Position numbers and translations under genes: made by a program. The notes under the pieces are model-generated. The model worked only from the letters and a program-made list of their open reading frames with translations, was not told the origin of the DNA and did not search any database. A stretch of 63,994 nt of DNA, counting the filler, from Ministeria vibrans ATCC 50519 (lineage: Eukaryota; Protista; Filasterea), in assembly GCA_943704425.1 (NCBI GenBank). It is 4 parts of 4 records of this genome, joined end to end, with 100 filler letters (N's around TTAATTAATTAA, not from the genome) between each part and the next. Parts side by side here need not be neighbours in the genome. Positions count along the whole stretch, not along the records: positions 29,787 to 57,125 come from CALSCP010001056.1; 3 more parts are not named here. One strand, written 5' to 3'. Shown piece by piece: positions 7,418 through 48,193 of this stretch; the stretch's first letter is position 1; every line of letters begins with the position of its first letter.

Positions 7418-9198
7418 AAAGAAGAAGAATGGATTATGTAGAAGAAGAAGAAGAATACAACCCATTTATTAATGATACAGTCACCACGCGAAGACACAGC
7501 CAGACCGCCTTGCAAACTCGACCGAAACTCTAGAGGTAACATGGGAGAACAGTGGCAGGTCATAGTGCTGTGTCGACGCTATCCAGTGAGGCAATCGCAA
7601 TGGTACGCCATACCCCCAGAGGAGGCTTAGGGCTCTGACACCATGAAGGTGTCTGTCGGCAAGGTGTGTAAAGTCGAAGTCGTGGTTGAGGCAATCGGAT
7701 CGGTGGTCGGCGGCGGCAAGTCCAGGTGGCTGCGGGGCGCTCCCGTGGTACACAGGCGGGGCGGGTCGGCTGTAGGGCGGCTGGTGTGCTTGTTGTCGTG
7801 ACTGTGTGTTAGATTATGAGGATAGAGATATGGATGGGTAGGGGGGGAACACGAGGGGTTCGGAAGGGTGAGTCAATGGGTGGCGTTGACGGCGACGATG
7901 AAGCATTTGTACATCTCCCCCAGGGGATGAAGTGCTTCATAGTGCGTGTCGTTGGTCGCGCGCAATGCCTCGGCAAGGGTCTTGCCGACCAGTGAGTCAT
8001 GTCGGTGTCGGTACACCGCTGGGTGAGCACAGTGGAGCAGGAAGTGTTCTGGGCTCTCCAGCGGTGGTTGTTGCAGTTGTTGTTGTTGTTGTTGTTGTGG
8101 CTGTGGGATGGCTGCGCACGCCCGACACCGGAACGTGTCGACCGACGCGCCGGCGGGGATGTTGAAGCGCGCAAAAGCTGGGCCCGCCATGCCCCGGTTG
8201 ATGCAGGTGGTGCCCGTGATGAGTGCGTTGCAGCGCAGCAGTAGCAGCACTTGCCCCGATCTCTTCGGCATCTTGCTCAGGTACTTGGATGTGCTCAGTG
8301 GGTTGTACCTCCTGTCTTTGAGTGGCGACGCGCTCGTAGGTCCGCTGAGGCTGGGCGTGTCTTGGAGACGCGCTCGCCACTCGTTTGTGGACAGACTCTC
8401 CGCTGCCTTCACGAGCTCGCCGTCCTTGACACGGTCGTAGCACAGGACCCGTCTTGCTGGCGCCCCCGCCGGCATTGGGTGCAGCGTCTCGAGCGTGTTG
8501 AGGATCGACAGCGCGTGAAAGCGCTTTTTCGCTCTCGGAGCCGCCGCTGCTCTTTCCGGGGTGTTCGNNNNNTTGCTGGCGCCCCCGCCGGCATTGGGTG
8601 CAGCGTCTCGAGCGTGTTGAGGATCGACAGCGCGTGAAAGCGCTTTTTCGCTCTCGGAGCCGCCGCTGCTCTTTCCGGGGTGTTCGCCAGCAGTGCCTCG
8701 AACACCTGAGATGCCAGGGGCACCACCGCGAGGGTCGTGCCTCTCGCCAAGTGTTGAAGCAGGCCCGCTTGCAGCGCTCTCGCACGGCCGGCGACCGGCT
8801 CAATGCCAAGCTCACCTTGCAGTCCCACCAGTGGTGCAAACTGTGGTGCGCGCGCGAGTCGTCTGAGGTCTTCGTTCTGCAAGAGGTTTAGCTCGTCGTA
8901 CTTCCCTAATGGCAGCACAATCGTGGCTTGTCCAAAGTCCATCGCGCTCCTCACGGCCTGGACATACACGTTTCGTAGGGCACCCACCCGTAGGTCCCGC
9001 AGAAACACCCGCTGCCACACAGCGCGTGCCTTGCCATACCGCTCCTTGATCCCCGCCGAGATTGACTGGGCGAGCCTGAGCCTGCGTGTAGGGCGCACAC
9101 CCGGTTCCGGTGTGGGAGCCGTGAATGAGCCGTTGATACAGAGGCCAAGGTACTTGAAGCCCTTTTGGTCGTCGACTCGCCTGAGCGCCACGCCGTCG
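7418..9198 (-). mobile_element. 5'-truncated non-LTR retrotransposon (RTE/RTEX-like layout): end of RT domain, CCHC zinc finger, (TTC)n tail, 13-bp TSD
   Basis: FKYLG RT motif; YVQAVRSAMDFG and LQGELGIEP thumb-region motifs; CRAC...ESPEHFLLHC knuckle; TTC repeats at the 3' end. TCATGATTATGTA flanks both sides (7405-7417 and 9199-9211). GC-rich insert in AT-rich flanks. Confidence 0.9.
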
Positions 9199-31540: not shown

Positions 31541-33793
31541 TTACATGACCACTTCAACAGCCACGGCAACATTGACTGCAGCCGCATTGAGCACCGAATG
31601 CGCCAAAGCATCGGGAACATAAACCAGATCACCCGCCCTTTGGACGCCTTCCCAGCGAGTGCAGGCAGGGAGAAGGTGCACTTGCCAGTCTGTCGCAGAG
31701 GTGTGCTCGCGCACAGGTCGTTTGCTCAGCACAGCGCATTTGGCCTCGAGGATGCTCCAGTGCTTTTCACCCTCAAACAACACATTGATGGCATCCAAGT
31801 GGAAGTGAAACGGAGCACCCGTGTGCACGCCACCCACCATGAGCTGCCACGGGTGAGTGCGGCGCGAGCGGAACGGCTCAGGGAAGTGCACATCGCGCAT
31901 GAGCATGCGATGGCGCATAACCAACTGGTTATCAAACAGGTACAATCCTTTCTGAAGCACATTGGCCTTCGCATCATGGCGATCATCATCATTGCTATTA
32001 TCACTACTACGCTGAGTGAGTCGAAGTTGCTCAGTGAACGCGCGAAAGGTCATTGGAACCTCAATTGCACTCGCATCCGATTCTTCCGATGCACTATTGT
32101 ACTGACGTGCATATGGAATCAGACCCACACGCACAGTCTCACTCCCCAAATGCTCATTCAAATAGTCGAGGGTCCATTGTGGGTGCCAGTCATGTGCAAT
32201 GCCACGGAGAATAAACGGGCGTTGCAGTGAGATGTGATCGCGCCAGAGCACATTGGGAGAAGGGAGAGAGGTGAAGATGGGAATAGATTCGGCGGGTGGT
32301 GCACTGAGGGAGTCCATTTCGAGTGGTGTTTCCGTGAGAATCACAGTGGAGAAGTCGCTGTGATCGCAGCGAAGAGAAGAAGGCAAAGACGAGTTGTCGA
32401 GAAGGAGAATCTGATCAACGAGAGTGCGCACGGGGCGTCTTTGTTGTTGCGAATGGAGCAGACGTGACAGATCGATTGCAGAACGATTGAATGAGTCGCG
32501 CTCTGAGAGTGCACTGACAAGGGACGCATGCGCGTTGCGCTCGAGTGACACACACGCCATGGCTTTAAGTGTGGCGTCAAAATTACGCACAACAGCAATG
32601 TGAAGTGGATTCATTGCAAGTGGAGAGTCACTCTGTTGGGTCTGGTGAGTGAGTGCGGAGTGAAGGTCAGAGGTCGAGCGCAGAAGGAGTGCCACTGCAT
32701 CAGCATCACCCACGTCAGCCGCCATGTGCAGCGCTGACCACCCGCGCGTGTTGCGACTCGTGATACGTGTGCGAAGTGCTGGACATTGCTTGAAAAGCCG
32801 ACGTAACAATCGTACGGTGAGGGCACTAATGTACGGGAAGAGTTTGTCGCGTGTGACGACGCGTGCGCCGTCTTCGACTATGTCCTGTGGGAAATCAAGC
32901 TTCCACGTCGCAAAAGTGTTGTGTGTGTGGGTGTCTTGATGGCCACACCACGGCGAAGGAGCTCCGTCGTGCTTCAGCAGAAGTGTAGCGACTGTTTTGA
33001 ATGTGTTTTTTGAGCTGACCGCAAAGTGAAGGGCGTTCCAACCGTTGTACGACGCACCGGTCGCCGTCGAGGTGGCACACTCTCCAAACCGCTTTGAATT
33101 GGACAAGAGACCCACTGCATCCTCGTAGCGCAGGTAAACGGCATAGTGAAGGGCGGTGCGCCCGTGTCCATCGCGAGCCGATGCGTCCCACTCCTTGCTG
33201 ACAATTCCTCGCAGTGTCTTGGTGAAATTCCCATGCTTGCTCACGCGCGCGCAGTGATCGAAGTGCTGGCGTTCGTCATAGCCTTTCAATGCAAAGTGAA
33301 CGCTGGTCATCGCGCCCGGAGGTTCGAGAGGGCCTTGGCAGGAGCAAACAAGTGAGCAAAAGACACACACACACAGACACACAGACACACACACACACAC
33401 ACACAGACACACACACACACACACACAGACACACACACACACACACACAGACACACAGACACACACACACACGTACACACAACATGTCATATGTCACTTA
33501 CCAGGTGTATTCTTGTCAACTGCGGTTGCTTTCAGACGAGCGCCGTTACGCTCAAGAAGACGGACAAGATCTAAACGGCCACGGTATGCGGCAAGGTGGA
33601 TGGCGGTCGGCGACGGCGAATGAGAGGACTGCGACGCTTGCTCGAGTGCGAGGCCCGCAGGAAGCAACCCTCGCACGGCCGAAGTTGCGTTTCCCTGGAC
33701 TATTGCGCGGTACAGCAAGCTCTGGGTCACCTTTGGATCCACTTGGCCCAGTGATCCCGGCAGAAGCAGCAGGAGAGCGATGAACACGATCAT
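31541..33793 (-). CDS. Signal peptide + ankyrin repeats + JmjC (JMJD8-like cupin) protein (2 exons)
   Basis: Signal MIVFIALLLLLPGSLG. Ankyrin cores TAIHLAAYRG, GRTALHYAV, GWNALHFAV, GWSALHMAA, MNPLHIAV. JmjC RPFILRG...WTLDYL, GAPFHFHLDAINVLFEGEKHW, QRAGDLVYVPDALAHSVLN. Confidence 0.88.
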
Positions 33794-33908: not shown

Positions 33909-36469
33909 ATGCTGCTGGACGTCTCGTTGTACAACGACCTGTCTCGGCACGAGATTGCGGGCGGGTTTGCTCTGATCGTGGTCTTCTATGCCATCTACAA
34001 GTCATTGACGCGCTGGCGCGATCCTATCGTCGAGACGCGCTATCTGGACAAGCTCGAGGCGGAGCGGGAGGCTCTACGGGCCAAGGGAACGCCGCTGTCG
34101 CCGCCTGGCCGCTACTGTGTTGTTGGTACGTTGGGGTTTGCGCATTTGTGTTTGGCGTTGGTGACACACACTCCTCCGCTTCCACGCGACAGGCGCCGGC
34201 TTCTGCGGCCTCGGCATCTGTGCTGCATTGGGGCGATGGGAGTTTGACTACGATTGCTTTGAAGCAGACGTAAGAGATTCAGAGGATTGATGGGATGAGT
34301 TTTGACGTCTTCGTTTTCGCTTGTTGTGTCTCTTATAGGACTGTGTTGGCGGAAATTGGTACCACGGCGTGTACGAGACGGTGCACATCATCTCGTCGCG
34401 ACGCACCACCGAGTACAAGGACCTCCCCATGCCCCGCTCGTTCTCTGAGTTTCCCAGCAAAGACGAAATGTTTCGCTACTTGTCGCACTATGCGCGTTTT
34501 TGGGATGTCAAGCGCCACATTCGCTTCAACACCAAAGTTGCAGCAGTGCATCCCATTGAAAAGGGCGAGCAAGGGTACGACGTGGAGCTCGAGGATGGCT
34601 CCATGCACCACTACAAGGTATTACGTTATTTCAGTAGTGTCATTGTCTGATTAATAACGACATACGCAGTAATTGCGTATTTTCATAACAACAACGCACA
34701 AGTGCAAACGACCACAAGCCAGTGGAATGATACTAAAGACGCACACTTTTTTGGTGTGTTGATAGGGAGTGATTATCGCCAATGGACACCACTGGGATGC
34801 GCGATGGGCTGGACCGTACCCGGGGACCTTCAGCGGCATGCACATGCACAGCAAACAGTATAAGGAGCCGAGCGTGCTTGAAGGGAAGCGTGTCTTGGTG
34901 GTGGGTGGGGGAAACAGTGCCTGTGATATTGTCGCGGAGGCAGCTCGTTTTGCTCGCTCTGCTCATGTGTCCCATCGCAGAGGTACTGAGAGGGAGAACG
35001 AGAAGTGTGTGCGTGTGTTTAGTGTGTGCTTATTGTGTGTGCTTATTGTGTGTGCTTATTGTGTGTGCTTTTGTGTGTGCTTTTGTGTGTGTAGTGTAGT
35101 GTGTATGGTAGATATTTGTGTTGAGTTTTGTTATTGTTTTGTGAGGGGTATTGATCGTGTGTGTATGTGTATGTGTATGTGATAGGTTATTGGTTTTTGC
35201 CGCGTACTATGTTTGGAATGCCGTCAGTGGAAGGAATTTTCCCGTGGATGCCACTCTGGTAGGCACAATAATTTATGGCTCCAATCCGCAATCCTATCTC
35301 ACTTTTCCCTCAGGTTTCAGCGCTTTTTTATCGGCCTTGCCCTTCGCTTAGTCGTTGGCAAATACACTGACTACGGTCTCAAAGAACCAGATCACAAACT
35401 CTTTGATCATCATCCGACGATCAACAGGTAAAATAGACAATATACTCATAACATGAAAGAAACGGATTTTTGTTTCTGTACAGTGATCTTCTGAACTATA
35501 TCAAGCTGGGACGAGTGACACCACACGCAGACATTAAGGAATATGACGGGCATACAGTCCGTTTTGAAGACGGTTCATCTGATCAATTTGATTTGATTGT
35601 TCATGCAACTGTAACCTGTTTGCATTGCAAGTCTCTCTTTCTCACACTAAGTATTTTACTTTCGTGTGTGTATGCGCGTGTGTCGTGTTTTTTTTGTTTT
35701 TTTTTGTTTTTGTAGGGATATCACGTTTCTATTCCTTTGCTCTCTTCGGATGTTCTGACGTGGTCGAAGCATCCGATCAACGGTCGAACGTACCCGGATT
35801 TGATTGAGGGAATGCTCATTCGGGACTATAAAGTATATGAGTTTTCGTGATTATTCACTTTGATTTATTATTTTCTTTCGTTCTTGTGTGTGTGTGTATA
35901 CGTGTGTGTGTAGAATCTGATTGTGTTTGGGGTGGGCCAGCCTCGCTACGGTGCTGGACCACTCATTACAGCAGGTGAACTTACCTACTTCTAGCCCTAA
36001 CCCTAATTCTAACCCTAATGACTAAATACATTGCTTTTGTGTGTCCGTTTAGGCGCTGAGGTTCTCGCCAAAATGCTGCGCATTCAGGAGGATTTGTCCG
36101 CTCCACTCGCAAATGTCCTTCATCGTCTGGGCTCTCCCGTCCTCTCCCAAAAGACGAACATGGTCGATCCTTACTTGAACGTAAAGTCATTCATTCATAA
36201 AACTGTATCACGCACCGCCTCTCACTGACATACTCACAGTGCTTCATGTTTTTATTAATCACACTCACAGTGCCTCACCTGTGTCAACTCTCTCTCTCAC
36301 TCACTGACCGACTCCCCCTCACTCACTGTCGCCTACTACTGACTTACTTACACTCTTCCTCACCGACCCACCGTGTGTCCCATAGGATCCTCATGTGGTG
36401 TTTACGGGTGCTCTCGAAGCTCTTTCCGCTCTCTCAAACTTGACCAAACTCGCAAAGCTTTTCTCTTAA
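33909..36469 (+). CDS. Flavin-containing monooxygenase (class B) with N-terminal membrane anchor (multi-exon)
   Basis: FAD motif VVGAGFCGL, GGNWYHGVYE, IIANGHH, FMO fingerprint FSGMHMHSKQYK, NADPH motif VVGGGNSACDI, HATGY; ends AKLFS*. Confidence 0.92.
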
Positions 36470-36506
36470 AATCGCCACAATTTTTTATTTTTATTTTGAA
36501 ATAATC

Positions 36507-38957
36507 TCATTGAGCGCTCTTTCTTCGGCCTTTTGGACTGTTTCTAACGTCGATTGCTCCTTCTCAGTGATTGATTGAATGTCACACAAATCACTCGCCT
36601 AAAACAACAACGAAAATAATTTAATTCAGAGAAAAGAGAGAATAGGAAAAGGCAACGAATGTAAGTCAACAATGATAATAATATAATAATAGCGTGAAAG
36701 AACTGAAACGAATACTGACGAAAACTGTCCATAACATTGAAATGAAAAAACCTAACGTTGATGGAAAACGGTCCATGAAGTCGACACAAAAAGGTGATTT
36801 CACAGTAAATAATGAAACGAAAATGATCAAACAAAGAACAAAAAGGTGAATAACATCATGTTTTTTTGTTGGTTATGACCTGAGAAGGGTCCAGCAAATG
36901 AAAATGTTTCTTCGTAATAACACACTGCTGAACAGCGTTTGTGCGTGAGTCGAGAAGGGGACTCACATGAGCCACACTCGCAATCATTCGGTTGTCTTTG
37001 CGGCGTGACAGAACCATTCCAGTCCATTCCTCACCAGACCTAATATATAGTGAAGAGATTAGAGTACTATTATTATTAAAGCTTCTTCATCAATCAGTGC
37101 CCTTTATGTAAAGGAAACACATTGACTGTCTGTCGGTCTGACAATTTCCAAATGCTCCATTGCAACTTACGAGATTTTGGATTGAATCTCTTGGGATTTG
37201 GCAGTCATTGAGGGACAAGAAATACAGCCAGTGACGTCACGAGCCGCTTTACCAATGACTTCAGCACGAGAATATCCTTTGAGAGCGATACCAAAGCAGA
37301 AAAACAACAAAATTTAGGGAGTGAGGGAGCAAAACAGTTCAGATTTGTACCAGTCATGATTTCCCACGTTGGATCGACAAACACATAATTGTTATCCGCG
37401 TCCGTTATTTCCACAGTGAGCAGGGCTGCAGATCCCAGCTAAAACATAATAATAATAATAATAATAATAATTATAATAATTATTATTTTTGTGGTGATTT
37501 TGAGTTTTTTTTTGAACCATTTAGTACCTTTTTCTGGAGCGTCTCATTTTCCGTCATTAATTTCTGGACATTTGACTGCGCCTGAAGGTTCTGCTTTGTA
37601 AGCAATTCATTGTGTTTACGGTGCTCTTTGATCGTCTGAGCGGCAGTTTGAGCAACAACGGCGCGAGAAGGGGTTTTGGAGGAATGGGCAAGAGACGGAA
37701 GGGAGAGAACGAGTTCGTGCATGGAGTCGCGGAGCTTGGTGCGACTGCGTTGTTCGGCGGCTTTGTGGCTGGGCGGACGGTCGCTGCTGCTGCGCTTCCG
37801 TGTGCTTGTGGCGGTGGCAGTAGCGGTGGCAGAGTCGGGTAGGTCGGAGGAAGATGCTTCTGAGGAAGCGTAGTTGGGTGGGACGACGTTGAGAGGTGGA
37901 GCGTGATTGTGGAGTTGGTAGGTTGGCGTTTCCACTTTGATGGTGGGGATGTCAAGGTGTTGGAAGGCAATCTCGGCGGGGTCTGTAGCAGTGGGTTCGG
38001 CAAAGGCAGCGGGAAGGGTAAAGGCCGTGAGGTCGTCAACCATCTCGGCAAAGGCACTCGGGAACTGGTTGGTGCCGAGACGTGCCGCCGCCTGGGCGCC
38101 GTACACCGTGCTCACGCCCTCCTCAATCAAATTGCCCATGTCTACGTCGTCGTCGGCCACCTGGCGTCCGCCGAGCTCGCGCACGTCGCGCAGAATGTTT
38201 TCCAGACTCAGGTCACTCAGCTCGCGCCGCAAAAACTCTTCGCCGCTCGTCAACACCACAAACTGCCGCTCGAGCACCTGGTCGCTGCTCACCAGCTCAA
38301 CGCCTGTCTCGGTGAAGAGGCGTGCCGTTGCACACGGCGTCGCGTACACCAGCTAAACGAAAGAGACGAGTTTACACTCAGATATCTCGACAGACACGAC
38401 AGCGACACACCCCGCGTGAGTCCACAGCAAACCCCAGACAATAGGAACCCCAGGCGGGCAAGAGCGCGTCGGCAACGGCAGTTTGACGCGCACTTATCGG
38501 CAAAAACTATTTTGACGGATACCCAGAAAAAAATGCACAGAATACAACTCACCTCGTGAAGGTCGGAGAGGGAATTTTGAAAGGGTAGCTGAGTGTGAAG
38601 GCGGGCCGAGGTGGCGGTAGCGGCGTCAAAGCGTCCGTCGTTGCGCAAAACGATCACCACAACCATAACGCCACTCTCCGGTCGATCGACGTCACGCGGG
38701 CCGCTGGAATGACAAGAGTGGGCAAGGTAGAAGGCAGGAGGCACGGCAAAAGCGCAGCTCGTGGCCCGATTGAATGATTAAAAAGTTGTGACTTTGCGAT
38801 TGCGCCGCACTCTCTTCTCTCTGTACACACACACATACAGCATTAGCAACTGGGAGTTCTCGCGACCAGCAGTGTACAGTTCATTAAACTCTCTTTCATG
38901 AGCTGGATCCGTGGATCGCATGGTGGAAGCACCAGTTTCACGGTCGTTCCCATACAT
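36507..38957 (-). CDS. Transcription factor with DCX-like (ubiquitin-fold) domain + bHLH-leucine zipper + PAS/PAC domain (about 7 exons; start uncertain)
   Basis: Phase-consistent GT-AG splicing gives VIVLRNDG...ARLFTETGVELVSSDQVLERQFVVLTSGEEF (DCX-like); SHKAAEQRSRTKLRDSMHELVLSLP...SRAVVAQTAAQTIKE plus zipper; VEITDADNNYVFVDPTWEIMTGYSRAEVIGK...CISCPSM...SGEEWTGMVLSRRKD...VSPLLD (PAS/PAC); last exon ASDLCD...EESAQ*. Confidence 0.8.
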
Positions 38958-39057
38958 TGAGTTCAATGAGTTGTCGTGTCAAATACTCACCAAATACTTA
39001 TTCAAATTTGATCTATTGTGGACGAATCACTCTGTCCTGGCTGTCCACGCTCATACA

Positions 39058-40043
39058 ATGACGACGGTATCTTCCACAGAAAGGCGAACCTTCAATTATC
39101 CTTTGTGTGTTGTAAGTTGACAGTTTGAGTTGCTGAGAAACAACTGATCCCTCGCTCACTCCTGCGAGCCTCTGCAGAACGGCGATATGCCCGATGAAAT
39201 GCGCATCGAAACGATGGACCTCTGCGTGACGGCCGTTGAGAAGTATTCGACAAACAATGAGGTATTGGGGTTTCGTATCTTAGCAACCAAACCATAAAAA
39301 AAACCTGTTTTACTATTCCCTTGCATTACATCGTGAGGCGACTGGCGCTCAAGCCACATATGTAATATGGGCCATGCTTTGACAACGCGTGCCAATGTCT
39401 TCGGATGAAGTTTTACAATATTTTTGGCATCGTTTGGTTTGTGCATTTGGTTTGTGCATTTCACAGGACCATTTCAGTGTCGGTATATCCAGCCCAAGAG
39501 CACACGACGAAGTCCTGACCGGTGGATCCTGTTTGTGAATAAGAGAATGCCTCCGGCGAATGCAAGTGACGTCAATTTATGTCTGTTGCGATTGAGAGAT
39601 TGAGAGAGAGAGAGAGAGTGAAGAGAGAAACATAGACAGAGAAACAAAGTGATAGAAAGAAAGAAAAGTGATAGAGAGAAAGAAAAGAAGTGGTAGAGAG
39701 AGAAAAAGTGATAGAAAGAGCCAAAATGAGAAAAAAAGAAAGTTATAGACAGAAAGAAACAGAGTGAAAAAGAAACAATCATTGTGTCTTACACTTTCTC
39801 ATATTGTCTTTGGGCTTAACAGTTGGCCGCGAAATTGATCAAAGAGACAATGGACAAAAACTACGGACCGTCCTATCATGTTATAGTGGGTAAAGCAAAA
39901 AAAAACACACAAGTGAAAATATGATGTTATGTTTTGTTTTCTTTTTAGGGGAAGGATTTGGATTTGAAATCACGTTTGCACAGAAACATATGATTTACGT
40001 GTTTTTTGGTGGAAACATTGCGATTCTTGTTTGGAAAATCTGA
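39058..40043 (+). CDS. DNAL4: Axonemal dynein light chain 4 (LC8 family; 4 exons)
   Basis: Spliced: ...FNYPLCV/NGDMPDEMRIETMDLCVTAVEKYSTNNE/LAAKLIKETMDKNYGPSYHVIVG/EGFGFEITFAQKHMIYVFFGGNIAILVWKI*. Confidence 0.92.
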
Positions 40044-44265: not shown

Positions 44266-47200
44266 TTATTTCTTTGACTTTTGACGGACTCTCCTTCGCT
44301 CGCGTTTCTCAGCATTGCTCTCACTCTGCTGAGCCTGCAAGAGCGAGTAGAGACGCTTGACCTTGCCTGCACGGTCTGCGTCGTTCTCGGCGACCTTTTT
44401 GGTGTGTTCGCGGGAGAGGAAAGCGGCGTCGCGTCGGAGTTCGCGCAGCGCTCCCTTCTTCTCTTGCTTGTGCATGTACTGTGAAACAGTGAATGTGTGA
44501 ATGCGTGAGTGTATGAGTGAGTGGGTATAAGTGAGTGAGTGAGTGTATGAGTGGGAGCGTGAGTGTATGAGTGTGTATGTGGATATGAGTATCTCAGTAC
44601 GTGAGGAGTGAGAAAGAATATGAGAGTGAACGACACACTCATTATTGTGAGATTTATTGTACCTTGAGTTTCTTGAGGTCGTTCTTATCCTTGTCCGGAT
44701 CGCGTCTGTGGCGTCTGATCTCATAGTGGTCATCAAAGGCAGGTGCGTACATGCGGATAGGAGTGGGGCGATGGCGCTGGAGGGCCAGAGGGACACGATC
44801 CGTTGTGGTATCAGTGGAGTGTGTGAGATCCGACAGGGTGTGTGTGACGAGGGTGACCAGTGGATGGGACGATGACAGATGCACTATGAGAGAGAGAAAA
44901 AGGAGAGAAACAAAGTGATAAAGTGTGAGAGGAGGGAGAAACAAATCGATATAGAGAGAAACAAAATGATAGAGAGAGAAACAAAGTGATAGAGAGAAAA
45001 ACAAAGTGATAGAGAGAAAAACAAAGTGATAGAGAGTGATAGAGAAAAAAAGTCAAAAGATGCCGTAAAAGCCAGAGATTATTATTCATATTTTATCACT
45101 TACGATTGAGTGTCTCTGAGAGGGAACTAAGTGCTTTGAGTGGCGGCGAAAACAGATCAACTGCGGCTGAACTCGCTCCGTACAACTTGACGAATCGCGA
45201 TAGAAGAGATAGTGCCACTCGAACAAGTCGCAATCTTCAGATAGATAGAGAGAAAGAACAAAGTGTATATATATATATATAGAGAGAGAGAGAAAGAGTC
45301 AGTCCCTGTCACATCACGCTACTTTTTTTTCGTTACTTGAACACATCTGACGAATCGACAGAAGTAGAACTTGATAGAATCGCAATGGGATCCAAAGGAG
45401 CAGCAAAACCAGTTGTAGAGTCATCAATAAGAGACGAAGAGCGCAGAGAGTCCACTGAGACACTGAGAAGGTGTTCTGCAAACACTGGCGGAGAAATCGA
45501 CCCGTCATCAACACTCACAACAGTCCGTTTCTTTTGCTTCTTCTTCGCGTCCGGTTCTTGTGATTCTGTTGCGATCGAAATGCGCTCAATGACTCCAGTA
45601 AGGAACGCAATGACTTCCGGAACGAGTCGCTTTGACTGCTCAACGTGCTACATATAGAATAAAAAAACACGGTTCAAGCTAAGCTACGATTTTTGTTAGT
45701 TAAACAGACTTACATGGTACAAAAGATCCACTGTAAAGAGAGCAGTGAGCAAGTGACGAGTTGACGCCACAATGCGACGGGAGAGAGACTCAGCAAGAAA
45801 GAGAGCGGTGGGAGTCGTCACAGGATGTTGAAGATCAGATGGAGGGAAGAGTAGTGCAAAGAGACGACAGTGTAGAAGAGTGGAGAGAGTCGGAGACGAC
45901 ACTGCGGGAACACGGACAGGGTGATAGAGATAGAAATGTTATAAGAGTTAGTCATGTTCAAAAAAGAGGGGAAACAATTTGATGTGATTCGTTGTGGGAG
46001 AAAGCAAGAGATCGTGAGAGAAGAGTAAAGGAGAGAAGAAAGAAAGAAAAAAAACAAAAAAGTACTCAATATGAAAGCGTACCGTTCTTGTTGAGTGCGT
46101 TTTCCATCAAATGGTCTCTAGCGCGCACCAGATACGCTCGTGCCTCGTTGGCCAGTGTGACAGGCGCAATGGGCGCCAGGTGTGCCAGTTCGCGCGCAAA
46201 ACCATCCACCAGGACCACATTCAATGGCGACTGCGCACTCTCATGTGTGAACTGTCCAAACTCACAGCGCAAGAGCGTTGCGAGTTTCTCGCGATTCTCT
46301 GCTTTGGCTGCAATCGGATGGCACTTGCGAATGCGCTCGAGAATCAACAACTGATCGGCTGTCGAGTGACCCTCAAGCAGCGCGTTCAGCTCCTCTCGGT
46401 CGTCAGGCGCACTAAACACAAACGGAAGCTGTGCGGCTGCTTCAGCTGCGCGTTCCTTCACCCGCTGCTCCCGATTCTCTTCCACTCGCTCTTCCTCGTC
46501 CTCCTCGTCCTCCTCACCTGACTCGTCAGATTCACTTGCAAGCTCAATATCAGAATAACCCTCACTATCATCATCGTCGTCATCGTCATCCTCACTCCCT
46601 TCATCATCATCTTCTTCTTCGTCTTCCTCCTCCTCGTCATTCTCACTCCCGCTTTCACTCTCACTTTCCTCACCACTCTCTTCTTCCCCTTCGCCAGGCA
46701 TAATCAGATTCCCCTCGTCATCATAGTACACCTCTTTGCGTCCCCTTCGCATTCCTCGCGTGTCCTCTGCCCACTCATCCTCCAACTGATCCGCGCTAAA
46801 CACCCCCTTGCTCTTCTTCTTCTCCTCGCGTGTGTCGTTCGGGTCTTCCTCTCCTCGCATCCGTCGCAACCGCTCATTCTCCAGTCGCTCCAGTCGCGTC
46901 TTTTCCTCCAACTCCCGCTCCTCCTGCGTCTTCAGTCGGTCTGTCGCATGTGCCCTGCGCTCAAAACCCATCTCACGCACCATTCGATCGTACTCGTCTC
47001 CTCCTTCGCTCTTCTTCTCCTGACTCTTCTTTGACGCCTCCTCCGCAATCGTCTCGCTGGCCACAAACGTCCCATTGGCCTTCTCCTCTCGCACGCGCTT
47101 CAACGACGCCTGCAGAATCGATATCGCATCGTACGCTCCATCTCCTGCCTCTCTATCACCATCGCCGTCTTCAGTCGCATCATCACGCTTGCGCTTCTTG

Positions 47201-48193
47201 TCCTCCTTCTTCTGCGTGTCCCGTCGTGTAAGAAGTCCCGCGATCGCATCAAACTCCTCGTCCAGCTGCTCCACCATCGTCTCTGCGTCCTCGCGCTCCT
47301 TCTCGCGCTCGTACCGATGCAACTTGCTCTTTGAGATCACTTCTTCCATAATCTCCTTGCGTGTCCGGTGCGGCGCTGCATCGCCCTCGTCGCCTCCGCC
47401 AAAGTGAAGGTCGCGCACGGTCGCTCCGTCGTGTGCGCCCGCCGAGTGCTTCGGCGCTCCTTCACCCTTGCGCGCCCACTTGTCCGCACGCATGTCATGA
47501 TCAGCGGCAGCATCAAGTGCCGCCGAGTCGGCCAACTCCTTGTCCTCAAAGTCGTCAATGGGCCGTCCACCGTGCGTGAGTCCCAGCAGCCCCACGCCAT
47601 CTTCATCGTCATCGTCGTCGTCGTCGTCGTCTCCATGCGCGCCAATCCGCGCAGCACCCTGGCCAAAACCATCGTCGTCGTCCAAGTTGAACAGACGTGC
47701 GCGGTGGCGCGCCTGAGCCGCCATAAAGCGACGCAACTGCCGATCTTCATCGCTGATGCCCTCGCGACCTTCCCCAAAACGACGGTCGACAATACCGCCC
47801 GCTCGTCCGCGTCGTTCCACCTCCACCAGCAGCGTCTGGCGCCTACGAGCCTCGCCCTCGGCACGTGCCACAGCACGAGAGCCCTTCTCCCCTCGTATTT
47901 TGCTGCAGAGGGGCGCAGGAAATATCAGCGGATCGAACGACCCAAAAAAATGTGCACACGCGAACGATTTTAGAGCCAACGCACCCCCCCTACTTACCGG
48001 CCGAGTACGTCAAACTTGCGCTTGGTCACGCGGAGCTCGAATGGGTTCTCTTTGACCTGTGGCGACAGAGCGAGAGTGAAATGAGGGAAGCCATGCGACA
48101 CACGTTGTTCCTTTGCAAAAAACGCACCTGCGCCGTCGACTTCTTCGCCACCTCGCCCGGCATCGAGCGCGTCTTCTTCTTCTTTCCAGTCAT
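44266..48193 (-). CDS. NOP14: Nucleolar protein 14 (SSU processome; multi-exon)
   Basis: NPFELRVTKRKFDVLGR, DRRFGE, LFNLDDD, GLTHGGRPI, HFGGG, RKEIMEEVISKSKLHRYER, YDRMVREMGFERRAHATDRLKT, KQEKKGALRELRRDAAFL. Confidence 0.95.
44900..45045. repeat. Intronic tandem array of the AAACAAAGTGATAG-(AG)n unit
   Basis: About 6-7 exact or near copies in a NOP14 intron; the same motif recurs at many other loci in the window. Confidence 0.85.

What the first reader, a model, noticed from the sequence alone, without database searches (positions are those of the whole stretch)
36507..38957. DCX-like + bHLH-leucine zipper + PAS/PAC: an apparently undescribed sensor transcription factor
Seen: the ORF track shows only fragments, but phase-consistent introns join a DCX/ubiquitin-like domain (~38236-38670), a Max/Mlx/USF-type bHLH-ZIP (H..E..R basic residues present, one usual Arg replaced by Ser) and a single C-terminal PAS/PAC (~36915-37420) of the ITD...MTGYS..EVIGK...W.G....RRKD type. 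Known: animal bHLH-PAS proteins lack a zipper and have tandem PAS-A/B; this PAS style is typical of microbial sensor kinases and PDE8; DCX domains bind microtubules. Inference: an independently assembled ligand-sensing bHLH factor that may be tethered to microtubules. It is head-to-head with the axonemal gene DNAL4.
Basis: partly seen in the sequence, partly recalled or inferred. Interest (0 to 1): 0.85.

Follow-up and report, generated by a model that had tools for sequence, protein, structure and literature searches.

The report
Holozoan DCX-like bHLH-zipper-PAS transcription factor
This is a real seven-exon gene for a dimeric DNA-binding factor with a doublecortin-like front domain and a single sensor (PAS) domain; it belongs to a small family found in single-celled relatives of animals, one member of which is already cited as the pre-animal "bHLH-PAS" gene.

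Summary
On the minus strand, seven GT..AG exons (38957-36491) give one open frame of 518 codons. Every internal junction is collinear with proteins from other species (Syssomonas, Chromosphaera, Corallochytrium, Creolimax, Ichthyophonus, Amoebidium, Sphaeroforma, Capsaspora, Pigoraptor). The family carries Pfam HLH plus one PAS. Its bHLH-zipper is closest to Max (E 2.9e-11, against 0.004 for the best animal bHLH-PAS protein). Its PAS is closest to NifL, MmoS and LOV domains, but lacks the LOV flavin residues and has an invariant CxxC. The N-terminal domain of a homologue folds confidently as a ubiquitin-like beta-grasp, and DCX domains are its top structural neighbours (Z 9.7-9.1), only slightly above CIDE-N and generic UBLs. 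No Pfam DCX threshold is met.

"Undescribed" is only partly right. The Capsaspora member is almost certainly the known pre-metazoan "bHLH-PAS", and single-PAS bHLH-PAS proteins are described in algae. What I could not find in print is the conserved DCX-like domain, the zipper, the Max-like bHLH and the CxxC PAS. Microtubule tethering remains speculation. No RNA evidence could be obtained. This is a new variant of a known kind, of moderate interest.

The parts
38839..38957 (-). Exon 1 (tentative): ATG at 38957, 39 codons plus 2 nt. It could instead be 5'UTR.
   Evidence: In frame with exon 2 across a GTATGT..CAG intron. No homologue has matching residues.
38553..38703 (-). Exon 2: first half of the DCX-like beta-grasp domain (VIVLRNDG...). 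The alternative start Met is at 38666-38664.
   Evidence: Aligns with the family N-termini (VTLFxNDG...). The closest relative, L002, has an intron at the same place.
37528..38352 (-). Exon 3 (275 codons): second half of the DCX-like domain (38352-38218), an acidic/hydrophobic linker with conserved motifs (38217-37771), the basic region and HLH (37770-37609), and the leucine zipper (37608-37528).
   Evidence: phmmer gave 14 family hits. PDB hits: Max E 0.003, then Pho4 and Myc. Profile A5 against PDB: Max 2.9e-11. Homodimer model ipSAE 0.71, best control 0.00. Coordinates were checked.
37351..37438 (-). Exon 4: start of the PAS domain (LLTVEITDADNNYVFVDPTWEIMT).
   Evidence: Collinear with the family motif TVEITD..FVDHMWEIV.
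37171..37276 (-). Exon 5: middle of the PAS domain (YSRAEVIGK...), carrying the family-invariant CxxC at 37226-37215 (CISC).
   Evidence: Both Cys are invariant in alignment A1 (C377 and C380 of P0002). Coordinates were checked.
36880..37039 (-). Exon 6: the PAS beta-strands (GEEWTGMVLSRRKD...), ending ...HFHLLDPSQ.
   Evidence: PDB best hit is the NifL PAS at the matching position. Alignment.
36491..36598 (-). Exon 7: C-terminal tail (ASDLC...ISK) and the TAA stop at 36493-36491. AATAAA follows at 36489.
   Evidence: The junction FHLLDPSQ|ASDLC mirrors Capsaspora FHLLDPMQASSVC. Without this splice the frame ends 7 codons later, at 36858-36856.
38958..39186 (.). Spacer of about 230 bp shared with the divergent dynein light chain gene; a likely bidirectional promoter.
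   Evidence: Follows from the positions of the two genes. Promoter activity was not tested.
39187..40043 (+). Neighbouring gene: an LC8-family (DNAL4-like) dynein light chain, exons 39187-39261, 39823-39889 and 39949-40043.
   Evidence: Pfam Dynein_light PF01221 is hit by three collinear pieces at profile positions 9-35, 36-58 and 55-85. Splice sites were read.

Best explanation
An intact, spliced gene of an opisthokont, most likely a unicellular holozoan whose proteome is not in the databases. It encodes a member of a small holozoan family with a fixed architecture:
- a single N-terminal DCX-like ubiquitin-fold domain;
- a disordered acidic/hydrophobic linker with two short conserved motifs, probably for activation or partner binding;
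- a Max-like basic-helix-loop-helix-leucine-zipper;
- a single PAS domain placed directly after the zipper.

Shown or modelled: the architecture, the H-E-R basic residues that recognise CACGTG-type E-boxes in Max, and a confident parallel homodimer running through HLH and zipper.

Inferred mechanism: the protein binds class-B E-boxes as a dimer, and the PAS domains at the end of the coiled coil modulate dimer geometry or partner choice in response to a signal. The PAS resembles the NifL/MmoS/LOV type but has lost the LOV flavin-contacting residues. It carries an invariant CxxC at the N-cap of the F-alpha helix, usually followed by Pro. I therefore favour thiol-redox, metal or haem sensing over flavin photochemistry.

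The N-terminal domain is more likely a protein-protein or oligomerisation module, as CIDE-N, KHA and the Grainyhead C-terminal UBL are, than a microtubule anchor.
For: Gene model: open 518-codon frame, GT..AG introns, consistent phases. All internal junctions are collinear with homologous proteins.

Family: 14 phmmer hits among 1.84e9 representatives, named as Syssomonas, Chromosphaera, Pigoraptor, Corallochytrium, Creolimax, Ichthyophonus, Amoebidium, Capsaspora and Sphaeroforma. Pfam HLH is found in 10 of 10 aligned members and PAS/PAS_9 in 10 and 9 of 10.

bHLH-zipper: family profile against PDB gives Max 6.8e-15 over bHLH plus zipper. The bHLH-zipper-only profile gives Max 2.9e-11, USF2 2e-7, Pho4 1e-6, SREBP 4e-5, Myc 1e-4. 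H, E and R align with those of Max. The homodimer of the window's own residues 183-275 scores ipSAE 0.71 against a best control of 0.00. That mark was reached by 21 of 30 solved homodimers and 0 of 23 solved single chains. The three runs agree in 100% of contacts, partner pLDDT is at least 83, and contacts run in heptad pattern to residue 273.

PAS: the AF2 model of the closest relative has pLDDT 90.8. Foldseek top hits are the NifL FAD-PAS at 7.7e-9, then LOVs and MmoS. phmmer gives NifL 6.5e-6 and phot1 LOV1 1.7e-5. The CxxC is invariant.

N-terminal domain: AF2 pLDDT 89.5, beta-beta-alpha-beta-beta. DCX domains are the top three of 48,161 chains, at Z 9.7 (rmsd 3.4, 92 aligned), 9.1 and 9.1. 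Foldseek's top hit is TgDCX at 2.5e-4. ESM Atlas gives KHA 0.94, DCX 0.89/0.86 and CIDE-N 0.85.
Against:
- The window's own exons give no Pfam hit when searched singly.
- The joined protein was not searched or folded. The two structure models are of homologues (L001, L002), not of the window's protein.
- The homodimer pass may be model memory of Max-like complexes.
- The window's first DCX half is divergent: the family-invariant Cys before RLY is Leu here.
- DCX stands only about 1 Z unit above CIDE-N, ELMO-RBD and generic UBLs. PF03607 is never hit, and PF25510 reaches only 15.6-18.2 bits against a cut-off of 30.4.
- The sensing chemistry of the PAS is pure inference.
Confidence: 0.7

Rival explanations
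1. One reading: a previously undescribed, independently assembled ligand-sensing bHLH factor that is held on microtubules (or the axoneme) by its DCX domain and released on signal, co-regulated with the divergent axonemal dynein light chain gene.
For: DCX domains, which bind tubulin, are the best structural matches. The tubulin cofactor E and B UBLs are also in the list. The gene is head-to-head with a Dynein_light gene, about 230 bp away. Similarity ranking favours an origin separate from the animal bHLH-PAS proteins.
Against: The family is not new to the databases or to the literature. The domain is single, whereas microtubule-stabilising DCX proteins use tandem DC repeats. No Pfam DCX threshold is met. 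CIDE-N, KHA and GRHL1_C, which are oligomerisation domains, score about the same. Some homologues come from taxa without known flagella (my own knowledge of Capsaspora and Creolimax, not tested here), so a link to axonemal genes is not general.
Confidence: 0.1
2. The family is the true orthologue or ancestor of the animal group C bHLH-PAS factors (a single origin in Holozoa, as the literature states). Animals would later have lost the zipper and the DCX-like domain and duplicated the PAS.
For: Mills et al. (PMC5800844) and Fortunato et al. (PMC5064789) treat the Capsaspora bHLH+PAS protein as group C and argue for one origin. The domain order bHLH then PAS is the same. BMAL1, CLOCK and ARNT are detectable with the bHLH profile at E 0.004-0.2. 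Weak PAS_11 hits (E 0.005, 0.015) occur in 2 of 10 members.
Against: The bHLH scores 46.8 bits to Max against about 20 bits to BMAL1. No animal PAS-A or PAS-B appears among PDB hits at E<=1 for the PAS, whereas NifL, LOV, MmoS and Aer do. The family has a zipper and a single PAS. No animal or choanoflagellate member was found among 1.84e9 representatives.
Confidence: 0.2
3. Two genes or a decayed locus: the transcript ends at the unspliced stop at 37483, so that the DCX-bHLH part and the PAS part are separate products, or the PAS part is a dead remnant.
For: The long ORF does end at 37483-37485 if the 89-nt intron is retained. No RNA data were available.
Against: Every homologue has the PAS fused directly after the zipper. 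The intron 37527-37439 is 15% GC, has a GTACTA donor and a TTTTAG acceptor, and keeps the phase. The three PAS exons are intact and retain all family-invariant residues.
Confidence: 0.03

Closest known systems
Capsaspora owczarzaki CAOG_08129 (XP_004342730 / KJE98111; 'hypothetical protein' / 'BHLH domain-containing protein'), very probably the pre-metazoan 'bHLH-PAS' of Sebe-Pedros et al. 2011 as cited in PMC5064789 and PMC5800844
   Same: Same family and same collinear architecture: N-terminal DCX-like domain, linker motifs, SHK..EQR.R basic region, zipper, single PAS with CxxC, and a C-terminal FHLLDP.Q....C tail. On the quick tree it is the nearest named relative of the window and L002 pair.
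   Different: About 30-37% identity only. The window's gene has six introns and a more divergent first half of the N-terminal domain. The papers I could read describe only 'bHLH + PAS'. I could not confirm the locus tag in any paper or read the 2011 paper.
Max / Myc / USF / Pho4 group B bHLH-leucine-zipper factors
   Same: H-E-R basic-region residues, HLH and a contiguous zipper. Max is the best PDB match by far. A Max-like parallel homodimer is predicted.
   Different: One basic-region Arg is Ser (EQRSR against ERKRR). Group B factors do not carry a PAS or a DCX-like domain.
Animal group C bHLH-PAS factors (ARNT, BMAL1, CLOCK, HIF, AhR, SIM, NPAS)
   Same: bHLH followed by PAS in one transcription factor. 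A sensor domain is coupled to a dimeric DNA binder.
   Different: The animal proteins have tandem PAS-A and PAS-B, no zipper and no N-terminal UBL. Their bHLH and PAS are much weaker matches than Max and NifL/LOV.
Algal RITMO1 (PtbHLH1a)-type bHLH-PAS proteins of diatoms and other microalgae (10.1101/271445)
   Same: A single PAS C-terminal to the bHLH, a short C-terminal tail and an N-terminal extension of variable length. That paper already lists Monosiga and Capsaspora proteins beside them.
   Different: No DCX-like domain or CxxC is reported there.
NifL PAS1 / MmoS PAS-A (FAD redox sensors) and LOV domains (FMN photosensors)
   Same: The best sequence and structure matches of the PAS domain, including the W.G....RRKD and P.. 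.G strands.
   Different: The LOV GxNCRFLQ motif and the two flavin-contacting Asn are replaced (A/A..T, S, S in the window, by the alignment). The family has instead an inserted, invariant CxxC(P)xM at the start of F-alpha.
Doublecortin (DCX) domains: human DCX/DCLK1/DCDC2, Toxoplasma TgDCX
   Same: Beta-grasp fold with the same order of elements. A sequence pattern (F/Y)xNDG ... (L/V)(F/Y)T..G.E(L/I) ... VVS.GE.F recalls YRNGD ... lyt.dG..v ... yv.s..e.F (this comparison is from memory). DCX domains are the top structural matches.
   Different: The domain is a single copy. It fails the Pfam thresholds, with only sub-threshold PF25510 (DCDC1 ubiquitin-like) hits in 3 of 10 members. Tubulin binding is untested.

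Membership tests
bHLH (Pfam PF00010), group B bHLH-zipper | Score at or above the Pfam HLH gathering threshold (20.7 bits) | tested here: inconclusive
   The window's exon 3 alone gives no HLH hit at E<=1. Family members do: all 10 of A1 match, and most are above the cut-off at 21.8-35.8 bits. The window's bHLH is found by phmmer against Max at E 0.003.
bHLH (Pfam PF00010), group B bHLH-zipper | Basic-region His, Glu and Arg at the E-box-contacting positions (H5-E9-R13) | tested here: met
   SHKAAEQRSR aligns H, E and R with Max HHNALERKRR. The residues are invariant in A1 (H252, E256, R260 of P0002).
bHLH (Pfam PF00010), group B bHLH-zipper | Helix 2 continues into a dimerising leucine zipper | tested here: met
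   The family profile covers Max residues 2-80, which is bHLH plus zipper. The homodimer model scores ipSAE 0.71 against a best control of 0.00. That mark was reached by 21 of 30 solved homodimers and 0 of 23 solved single chains. The runs agree in 100% of contacts and partner pLDDT is at least 83. Contacts run in a/d pattern at 251-273. This is a model only and may reflect memory of Max.
bHLH (Pfam PF00010), group B bHLH-zipper | Sequence-specific binding to CACGTG-type E-boxes | not testable with these tools
   Needs EMSA, DAP-seq or protein-binding microarrays.
Animal group C bHLH-PAS | Tandem PAS-A and PAS-B after the bHLH | tested here: not met
   There is one PAS domain only in the window model and in every homologue.
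Animal group C bHLH-PAS | bHLH closest to ARNT/BMAL/CLOCK/HIF/AhR rather than to group B | tested here: not met
   Profile A5: Max 46.8 bits (2.9e-11), against BMAL1 about 20 bits (0.004), CLOCK 0.03 and ARNT 0.1-0.2. HIF, AhR, SIM and NPAS are absent at E<=10. This is a similarity ranking, not a phylogeny.
Algal RITMO1-like bHLH-PAS | Single PAS C-terminal to the bHLH, with an N-terminal extension | tested here: met
   The architecture is as described in 10.1101/271445 and as seen.
Algal RITMO1-like bHLH-PAS | Sequence or phylogenetic affinity to PtbHLH1a clades | not tested
   No RITMO1 sequence could be obtained. None appeared among the 14 hits, but that query lacked the PAS.
PAS domain (PF00989 / PF13426) | Score at or above the Pfam gathering thresholds | tested here: inconclusive
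   The window's PAS is split over three exons of 29, 34 and 53 codons, which give no hit singly. The closest relative, L002, scores PF00989 26.1 bits against 22.6. Homologues score PAS_9 31.9-39.3 bits against 27. The joined window protein was not searched.
PAS domain (PF00989 / PF13426) | Five-stranded antiparallel sheet with C/D/E/F-alpha helices | tested here: met
   The AF2 model of L002:2877-3254 has pLDDT 90.8 and the expected order of elements. Foldseek gives E 1e-8 to NifL, LOV and MmoS. The window's exons align to it without gaps at the junctions.
LOV (flavin photosensor) subfamily | GxNCRFLQ motif with the photoactive Cys, and flavin-contacting Asn/Gln | tested here: not met
   In the phot1 LOV1 alignment, N, C and Q of NCRFLQ and the two strand Asn fall on non-equivalent residues (window: A, A, T, S, S). 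Only the basic residue is mostly kept.
DCX domain (PF03607) / DCDC1 ubiquitin-like (PF25510) | Score at or above the Pfam gathering threshold | tested here: not met
   PF03607 is never hit. PF25510 is hit in 3 of 10 homologues at 15.6-18.2 bits against a cut-off of 30.4. There is no hit for the window exons or for the L001 N-terminus.
DCX domain (PF03607) / DCDC1 ubiquitin-like (PF25510) | Beta-grasp fold with DCX domains as nearest structural neighbours | tested here: met
   For the model of the homologue's N-terminus (pLDDT 89.5): 2dnf Z 9.7 (rmsd 3.4, 92 aligned), 5ikc 9.1 and 6b4a 9.1 are ranks 1-3 of 48,161 chains. The margin over CIDE-N (8.6) and UBLs (about 8) is under or near 1 Z, so these are close to tied.
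DCX domain (PF03607) / DCDC1 ubiquitin-like (PF25510) | Tandem DC repeats and microtubule binding | tested here: not met
   There is one copy only. Tubulin binding cannot be tested with these tools.

The most novel reading that the evidence does not exclude
The protein is a cytoskeleton-parked, redox- or metal-gated transcription factor. In this reading its single DCX-like domain holds it on microtubules or the flagellar apparatus, and oxidation or metal loading of the invariant PAS CxxC changes the dimer and releases it to E-boxes. The 'pre-metazoan bHLH-PAS' would then be a separate invention, unrelated in origin to the animal HIF/AhR/CLOCK factors and lost before choanoflagellates and animals diverged.
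Probability: 0.08. Interest if true: 0.8.

Novelty: new variant of a known kind. Interest (0 to 1): 0.45.

Why it matters
The Capsaspora bHLH+PAS gene is used in the animal-origins literature as proof that bHLH-PAS factors (HIF, AhR, CLOCK) predate animals. This window adds a new, deeply divergent member.

The comparison it prompted shows that the family is widespread in Ichthyosporea, Pluriformea and Filasterea. It also shows a conserved third domain (DCX-like), a zipper, a Max-like bHLH and a NifL/LOV-like PAS with an invariant CxxC. If proper trees confirm the similarity ranking, the 'pre-metazoan bHLH-PAS' is a parallel invention, and animal group C would again be animal-specific.

The family also offers a compact, experimentally tractable sensor-to-DNA module, because Capsaspora, Corallochytrium and Creolimax can be transfected. 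Its signal (thiol redox, metal or haem) is unknown.

Tried and rejected
- Pfam on each exon alone: blank.
- The search for homologous proteins on the long ORF: nothing. With the family alignment it returned only members already known plus one bacterial PAS kinase; the word index was capped at 8000 candidates.
- Two metagenome scans, one with the family alignment and one with exon 3, found no relative.
- phmmer of the homologue's N-terminal domain against PDB gave only spurious WD40-repeat matches and no DCX.
- The fragment-only N-terminal alignment A4 was misaligned and was dropped.
- tRNA and Rfam scans of the piece were blank.
- Literature: no paper mentions CAOG_08129. No paper combines doublecortin, HLH, PAS and Capsaspora. 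Sebe-Pedros et al. 2011 is not held.
The extra splice restores the family's FHLLDP.Q....C tail.
- LOV-type flavin photochemistry was rejected on the residue mapping.
- The joined spliced protein was deliberately not sent to any search or fold. Only frame openness was computed in scripts. One search wrote a joined translation to scratch, and it was never used.
- The tree is a quick, unfinished search with many long branches. It is used only as a hint.
Full report
WHAT IS THERE

The ORF track between 36.4 and 39.0 kb shows only fragments on the minus strand. The longest is a 288-aa ORF that ends at a stop at 37483-37485. I read the strand and checked splice sites and phases by script. This gives seven exons: 38957-38839, 38703-38553, 38352-37528, 37438-37351, 37276-37171, 37039-36880 and 36598-36491.

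All six introns are GT..AG and 74-280 nt long. The frame is open for 518 codons, with one terminal stop (TAA 36493-36491) followed at once by AATAAA. Exons are 41-61% GC (six of the seven 45-61%). The four 3' introns are 15-39% GC, whereas the two 5' introns are 51% GC and show no contrast with the exons.

- Exon 4 starts at 37438, not 37439.
- An intron inside the PAS domain (37350-37277) was not listed.
- A last intron (36879-36599) was not listed.

Exons were searched one by one by reference, and scripts only checked that the frame is open.

IS THE MODEL REAL?

The support is comparative.

phmmer of exon 3 against 1.84 billion representative proteins found 14 relatives. The source records name them as follows:
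- Syssomonas multiformis (three paralogues)
- Chromosphaera perkinsii
- Pigoraptor chileana
- Corallochytrium limacisporum
- Creolimax fragrantissima
- Ichthyophonus hoferi
- Amoebidium parasiticum
- Capsaspora owczarzaki CAOG_08129
- Sphaeroforma arctica SARC_01821
- two metagenome or SRA contigs

Several of these names appear to denote transcriptome assemblies, which would carry no introns. All seven window exons align to these proteins in order. Every internal junction falls inside conserved sequence with no residue missing or added...LHE|LVY......QKK|LGSAALLTVEITD, WEIMT(G)YSRAEVIGK...KIS(S)GEEW.G. The last splice turns FHLLDPSQ + ASDLC into the same tail as Capsaspora FHLLDPMQASSVC.

The closest relative is a 3.7-kb JGI metagenome contig (L002, 36-37% identity). 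It has an intron at the same place between the two halves of the N-terminal domain.

Exon 1 alone has no counterpart in any homologue. The family's N-termini start a few residues before the first strand, exactly where exon 2 has a Met (38666). The protein is therefore either 518 or 466 aa long.

A separate PAS gene, or a product truncated at 37483, is very unlikely.

THE THREE DOMAINS

(a) bHLH-zipper. Pfam misses it in the window's exon alone but finds HLH in all ten aligned family members.
- Against PDB sequences, the window's exon 3 hits only Max (E 0.003), Pho4 and Myc.
- A profile of only the bHLH-zipper pieces (window, L002, L001) gives Max 2.9e-11, USF2 2e-7, Pho4 1e-6, SREBP-1 4e-5, Myc 1e-4 and Cbf1 5e-4.
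- The best animal bHLH-PAS proteins trail far behind: BMAL1 0.004, CLOCK 0.03, ARNT 0.1-0.2.
- The His, Glu and Arg that read CACGTG in Max are aligned and invariant.
- A homodimer model of the window's own residues 183-275 scored ipSAE 0.71 against 0.00 for the best of three controls. That mark was reached by 21 of 30 solved homodimers and 0 of 23 solved single chains. The runs agreed in 100% of contacts and the partner's pLDDT was at least 83. Contacts run in a heptad pattern to residue 273. The tool warns that such a pass can be memory of solved Max-like dimers.

(b) PAS. Homologues pass PAS_9 or PAS thresholds, and L002's PAS scores 26.1 bits against a cut-off of 22.6.
- The AF2 model of L002's PAS, built with the family alignment that includes the window's exons, has pLDDT 90.8.
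- Its best structural matches are the FAD-binding PAS of NifL (7.7e-9), many LOV domains and MmoS.
- By sequence, NifL scores 6.5e-6, phototropin LOV1 1.7e-5 and MmoS 2e-4. No animal PAS-A or PAS-B appears at E<=1.
- The printed LOV alignment shows that the NCRFLQ motif and the flavin-contacting Asn residues are not kept.
- The family instead has a short insertion with an invariant CxxC, often CxxCPxM (window: CISC, 37226-37215). It sits at the N-terminal cap of the F-alpha helix of the model. In thioredoxin-like proteins that position makes a reactive thiol pair; in haem-PAS proteins that helix carries the axial ligand (both from general knowledge). This is why I favour redox, metal or haem sensing, but nothing here tests it.
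- The two divergent Syssomonas paralogues that appear to lack the N-terminal domain in the alignment (their assemblies may be incomplete) also lack the CxxC.

(c) N-terminal domain. The sequence pattern (V.LF.NDG ... RLY ... ARLFT..GVEL ... VVS.GE.F) is conserved across the family, although the window's first half is divergent.
- Pfam gives only sub-threshold hits to PF25510 (DCDC1 ubiquitin-like domain) in 3 of 10 members. It never hits PF03607.
- An AF2 model of a homologue's domain (L001:161-445, pLDDT 89.5) is a beta-beta-alpha-beta-beta grasp.
- Foldseek ranks Toxoplasma TgDCX first, at 2.5e-4 and 1.2e-3.
- VIA-align against 48,161 representative chains ranks three DCX domains first: 2dnf Z 9.7 (rmsd 3.4 over 92 residues), human DCX N-DC 9.1 and TgDCX 9.1. 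CIDE-N (8.6), ELMO RBD (8.5), the tubulin cofactor E UBL (8.3) and ordinary ubiquitin-likes (7-8) follow.
- ESM-Atlas features give KHA 0.94, DCX 0.89/0.86 and CIDE-N 0.85.

'DCX-like ubiquitin-fold domain' is therefore a fair name. Membership of the DCX family proper is not shown. The domain is single, whereas microtubule-stabilising DCX proteins use two (general knowledge).

SURROUNDINGS AND SOURCE

About 230 bp upstream, on the other strand, lie three collinear exons of a dynein light chain of the LC8 family (PF01221). From memory of the human sequence it is DNAL4-like. The head-to-head arrangement is confirmed.

Downstream of the gene lie an FMO-like gene and an ankyrin + cupin/JmjC ORF. 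Further upstream lies Nop14. The Nop14 ORF is at most 37% identical to anything in 5.8 billion proteins, and its best hits are animals and fungi. No near-identical copy of the gene of interest exists in the collections.

The source is therefore an opisthokont whose proteome is not in the databases. A quick, unfinished tree puts the window with L002 (support 92) and nearest to Capsaspora. This is a hint only.

COMPARISON WITH WHAT IS KNOWN

bHLH-PAS factors were long held to be animal-specific. A Capsaspora gene has been cited as the exception since 2011 (PMC5064789). Mills et al. state that the combination occurs only in animals and Capsaspora, is absent from choanoflagellates, and 'evolved only once in holozoans' (PMC5800844). 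Annunziata et al. describe about 90 algal bHLH-PAS proteins with a single PAS and an N-terminal extension, and place Monosiga and Capsaspora proteins beside them (10.1101/271445).

The bare combination is therefore not new, and the family's members sit in the databases as hypothetical or 'BHLH domain-containing' proteins. I could not find the following in print:
- the conserved DCX-like domain;
- the zipper and the Max-like character of the bHLH;
- the NifL/LOV-like PAS with its CxxC;
- the spread of the family through Ichthyosporea, Pluriformea and Filasterea.

The similarity rankings favour a group B bHLH-zipper that acquired a microbial-style PAS, over an ancestor of animal group C. I could not build the trees that would decide this, because no animal or algal sequences could be obtained.

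VERDICT

The gene is a new, divergent member of an existing but uncharacterised holozoan family. That family's architecture is a variant of the bHLH-PAS theme.

The most likely mechanism is an E-box-binding homodimer, or a heterodimer within group B, whose PAS-CxxC senses redox state, a metal or haem, and whose N-terminal UBL serves protein-protein contacts. Microtubule tethering is possible but unsupported.

Noticed in passing
window 39187-40043 (+): A three-exon LC8-family dynein light chain gene (DNAL4-like by my memory of the human protein), divergent from the transcription factor gene with about 230 bp between them. Further 5' exons were not looked for.
   Followed up: partly
window 31544-33490 (-): A 649-aa ORF combining ankyrin repeats with a C-terminal Cupin_8/JmjC domain, which is the family of FIH/HIF1AN-type hydroxylases that act on ankyrin repeats. 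Its apparent N-terminus is a translated (TG)n microsatellite (CVCVCV...), so the real start is probably further in.
   Followed up: partly
window 46069-47979 (-): A Nop14 ORF (Pfam E 1.7e-100) that is at most 37% identical to any of 5.8 billion database proteins, with animals and fungi as best hits. The source genome is from a lineage not represented in the protein collections.
   Followed up: partly
window 34369-35179 (+): Exon pieces of a flavin-containing monooxygenase (FMO-like PF00743, E 1.5e-14 and 2.5e-7) lie between the ankyrin-JmjC ORF and the transcription factor gene.
   Followed up: partly
L002:1382-1537 and 1908-2042; L002:2667-3254: The closest relative (JGI metagenome 3300071654 contig) shares the intron that splits the DCX-like domain. 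Its bHLH, zipper and PAS lie in one uninterrupted ORF, whereas the window has three introns there. L002 also carries (CA)n microsatellites like those of the window. The called protein P0001 appears to read through introns at both ends.
   Followed up: partly
P0008, P0012 (Syssomonas paralogues): Two divergent paralogues with HLH plus PAS appear to lack both the N-terminal DCX-like domain and the PAS CxxC in the alignment, which suggests the two features go together. The source names suggest transcriptome assemblies (not checked), so the proteins may be incomplete.
   Followed up: no
window 37439-37527 (-): The intron between the zipper and the PAS is 15% GC and is largely an (ATT)n run. If it is retained, the frame stops after 14 codons, at 37483-37485.
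   Followed up: no
window 38217-37900 (-): Two short motifs in the otherwise poorly conserved linker are shared across the family: ..L.E.(L/V)..(V/L)Y.. and L.(S/E)(I/L)F.N(I/M).(L/F)P(S/T). They are candidate activation or docking motifs of unknown function. The window and L002 also share FP.AFAEM(V/I)(D/E)D and PTY.
   Followed up: no
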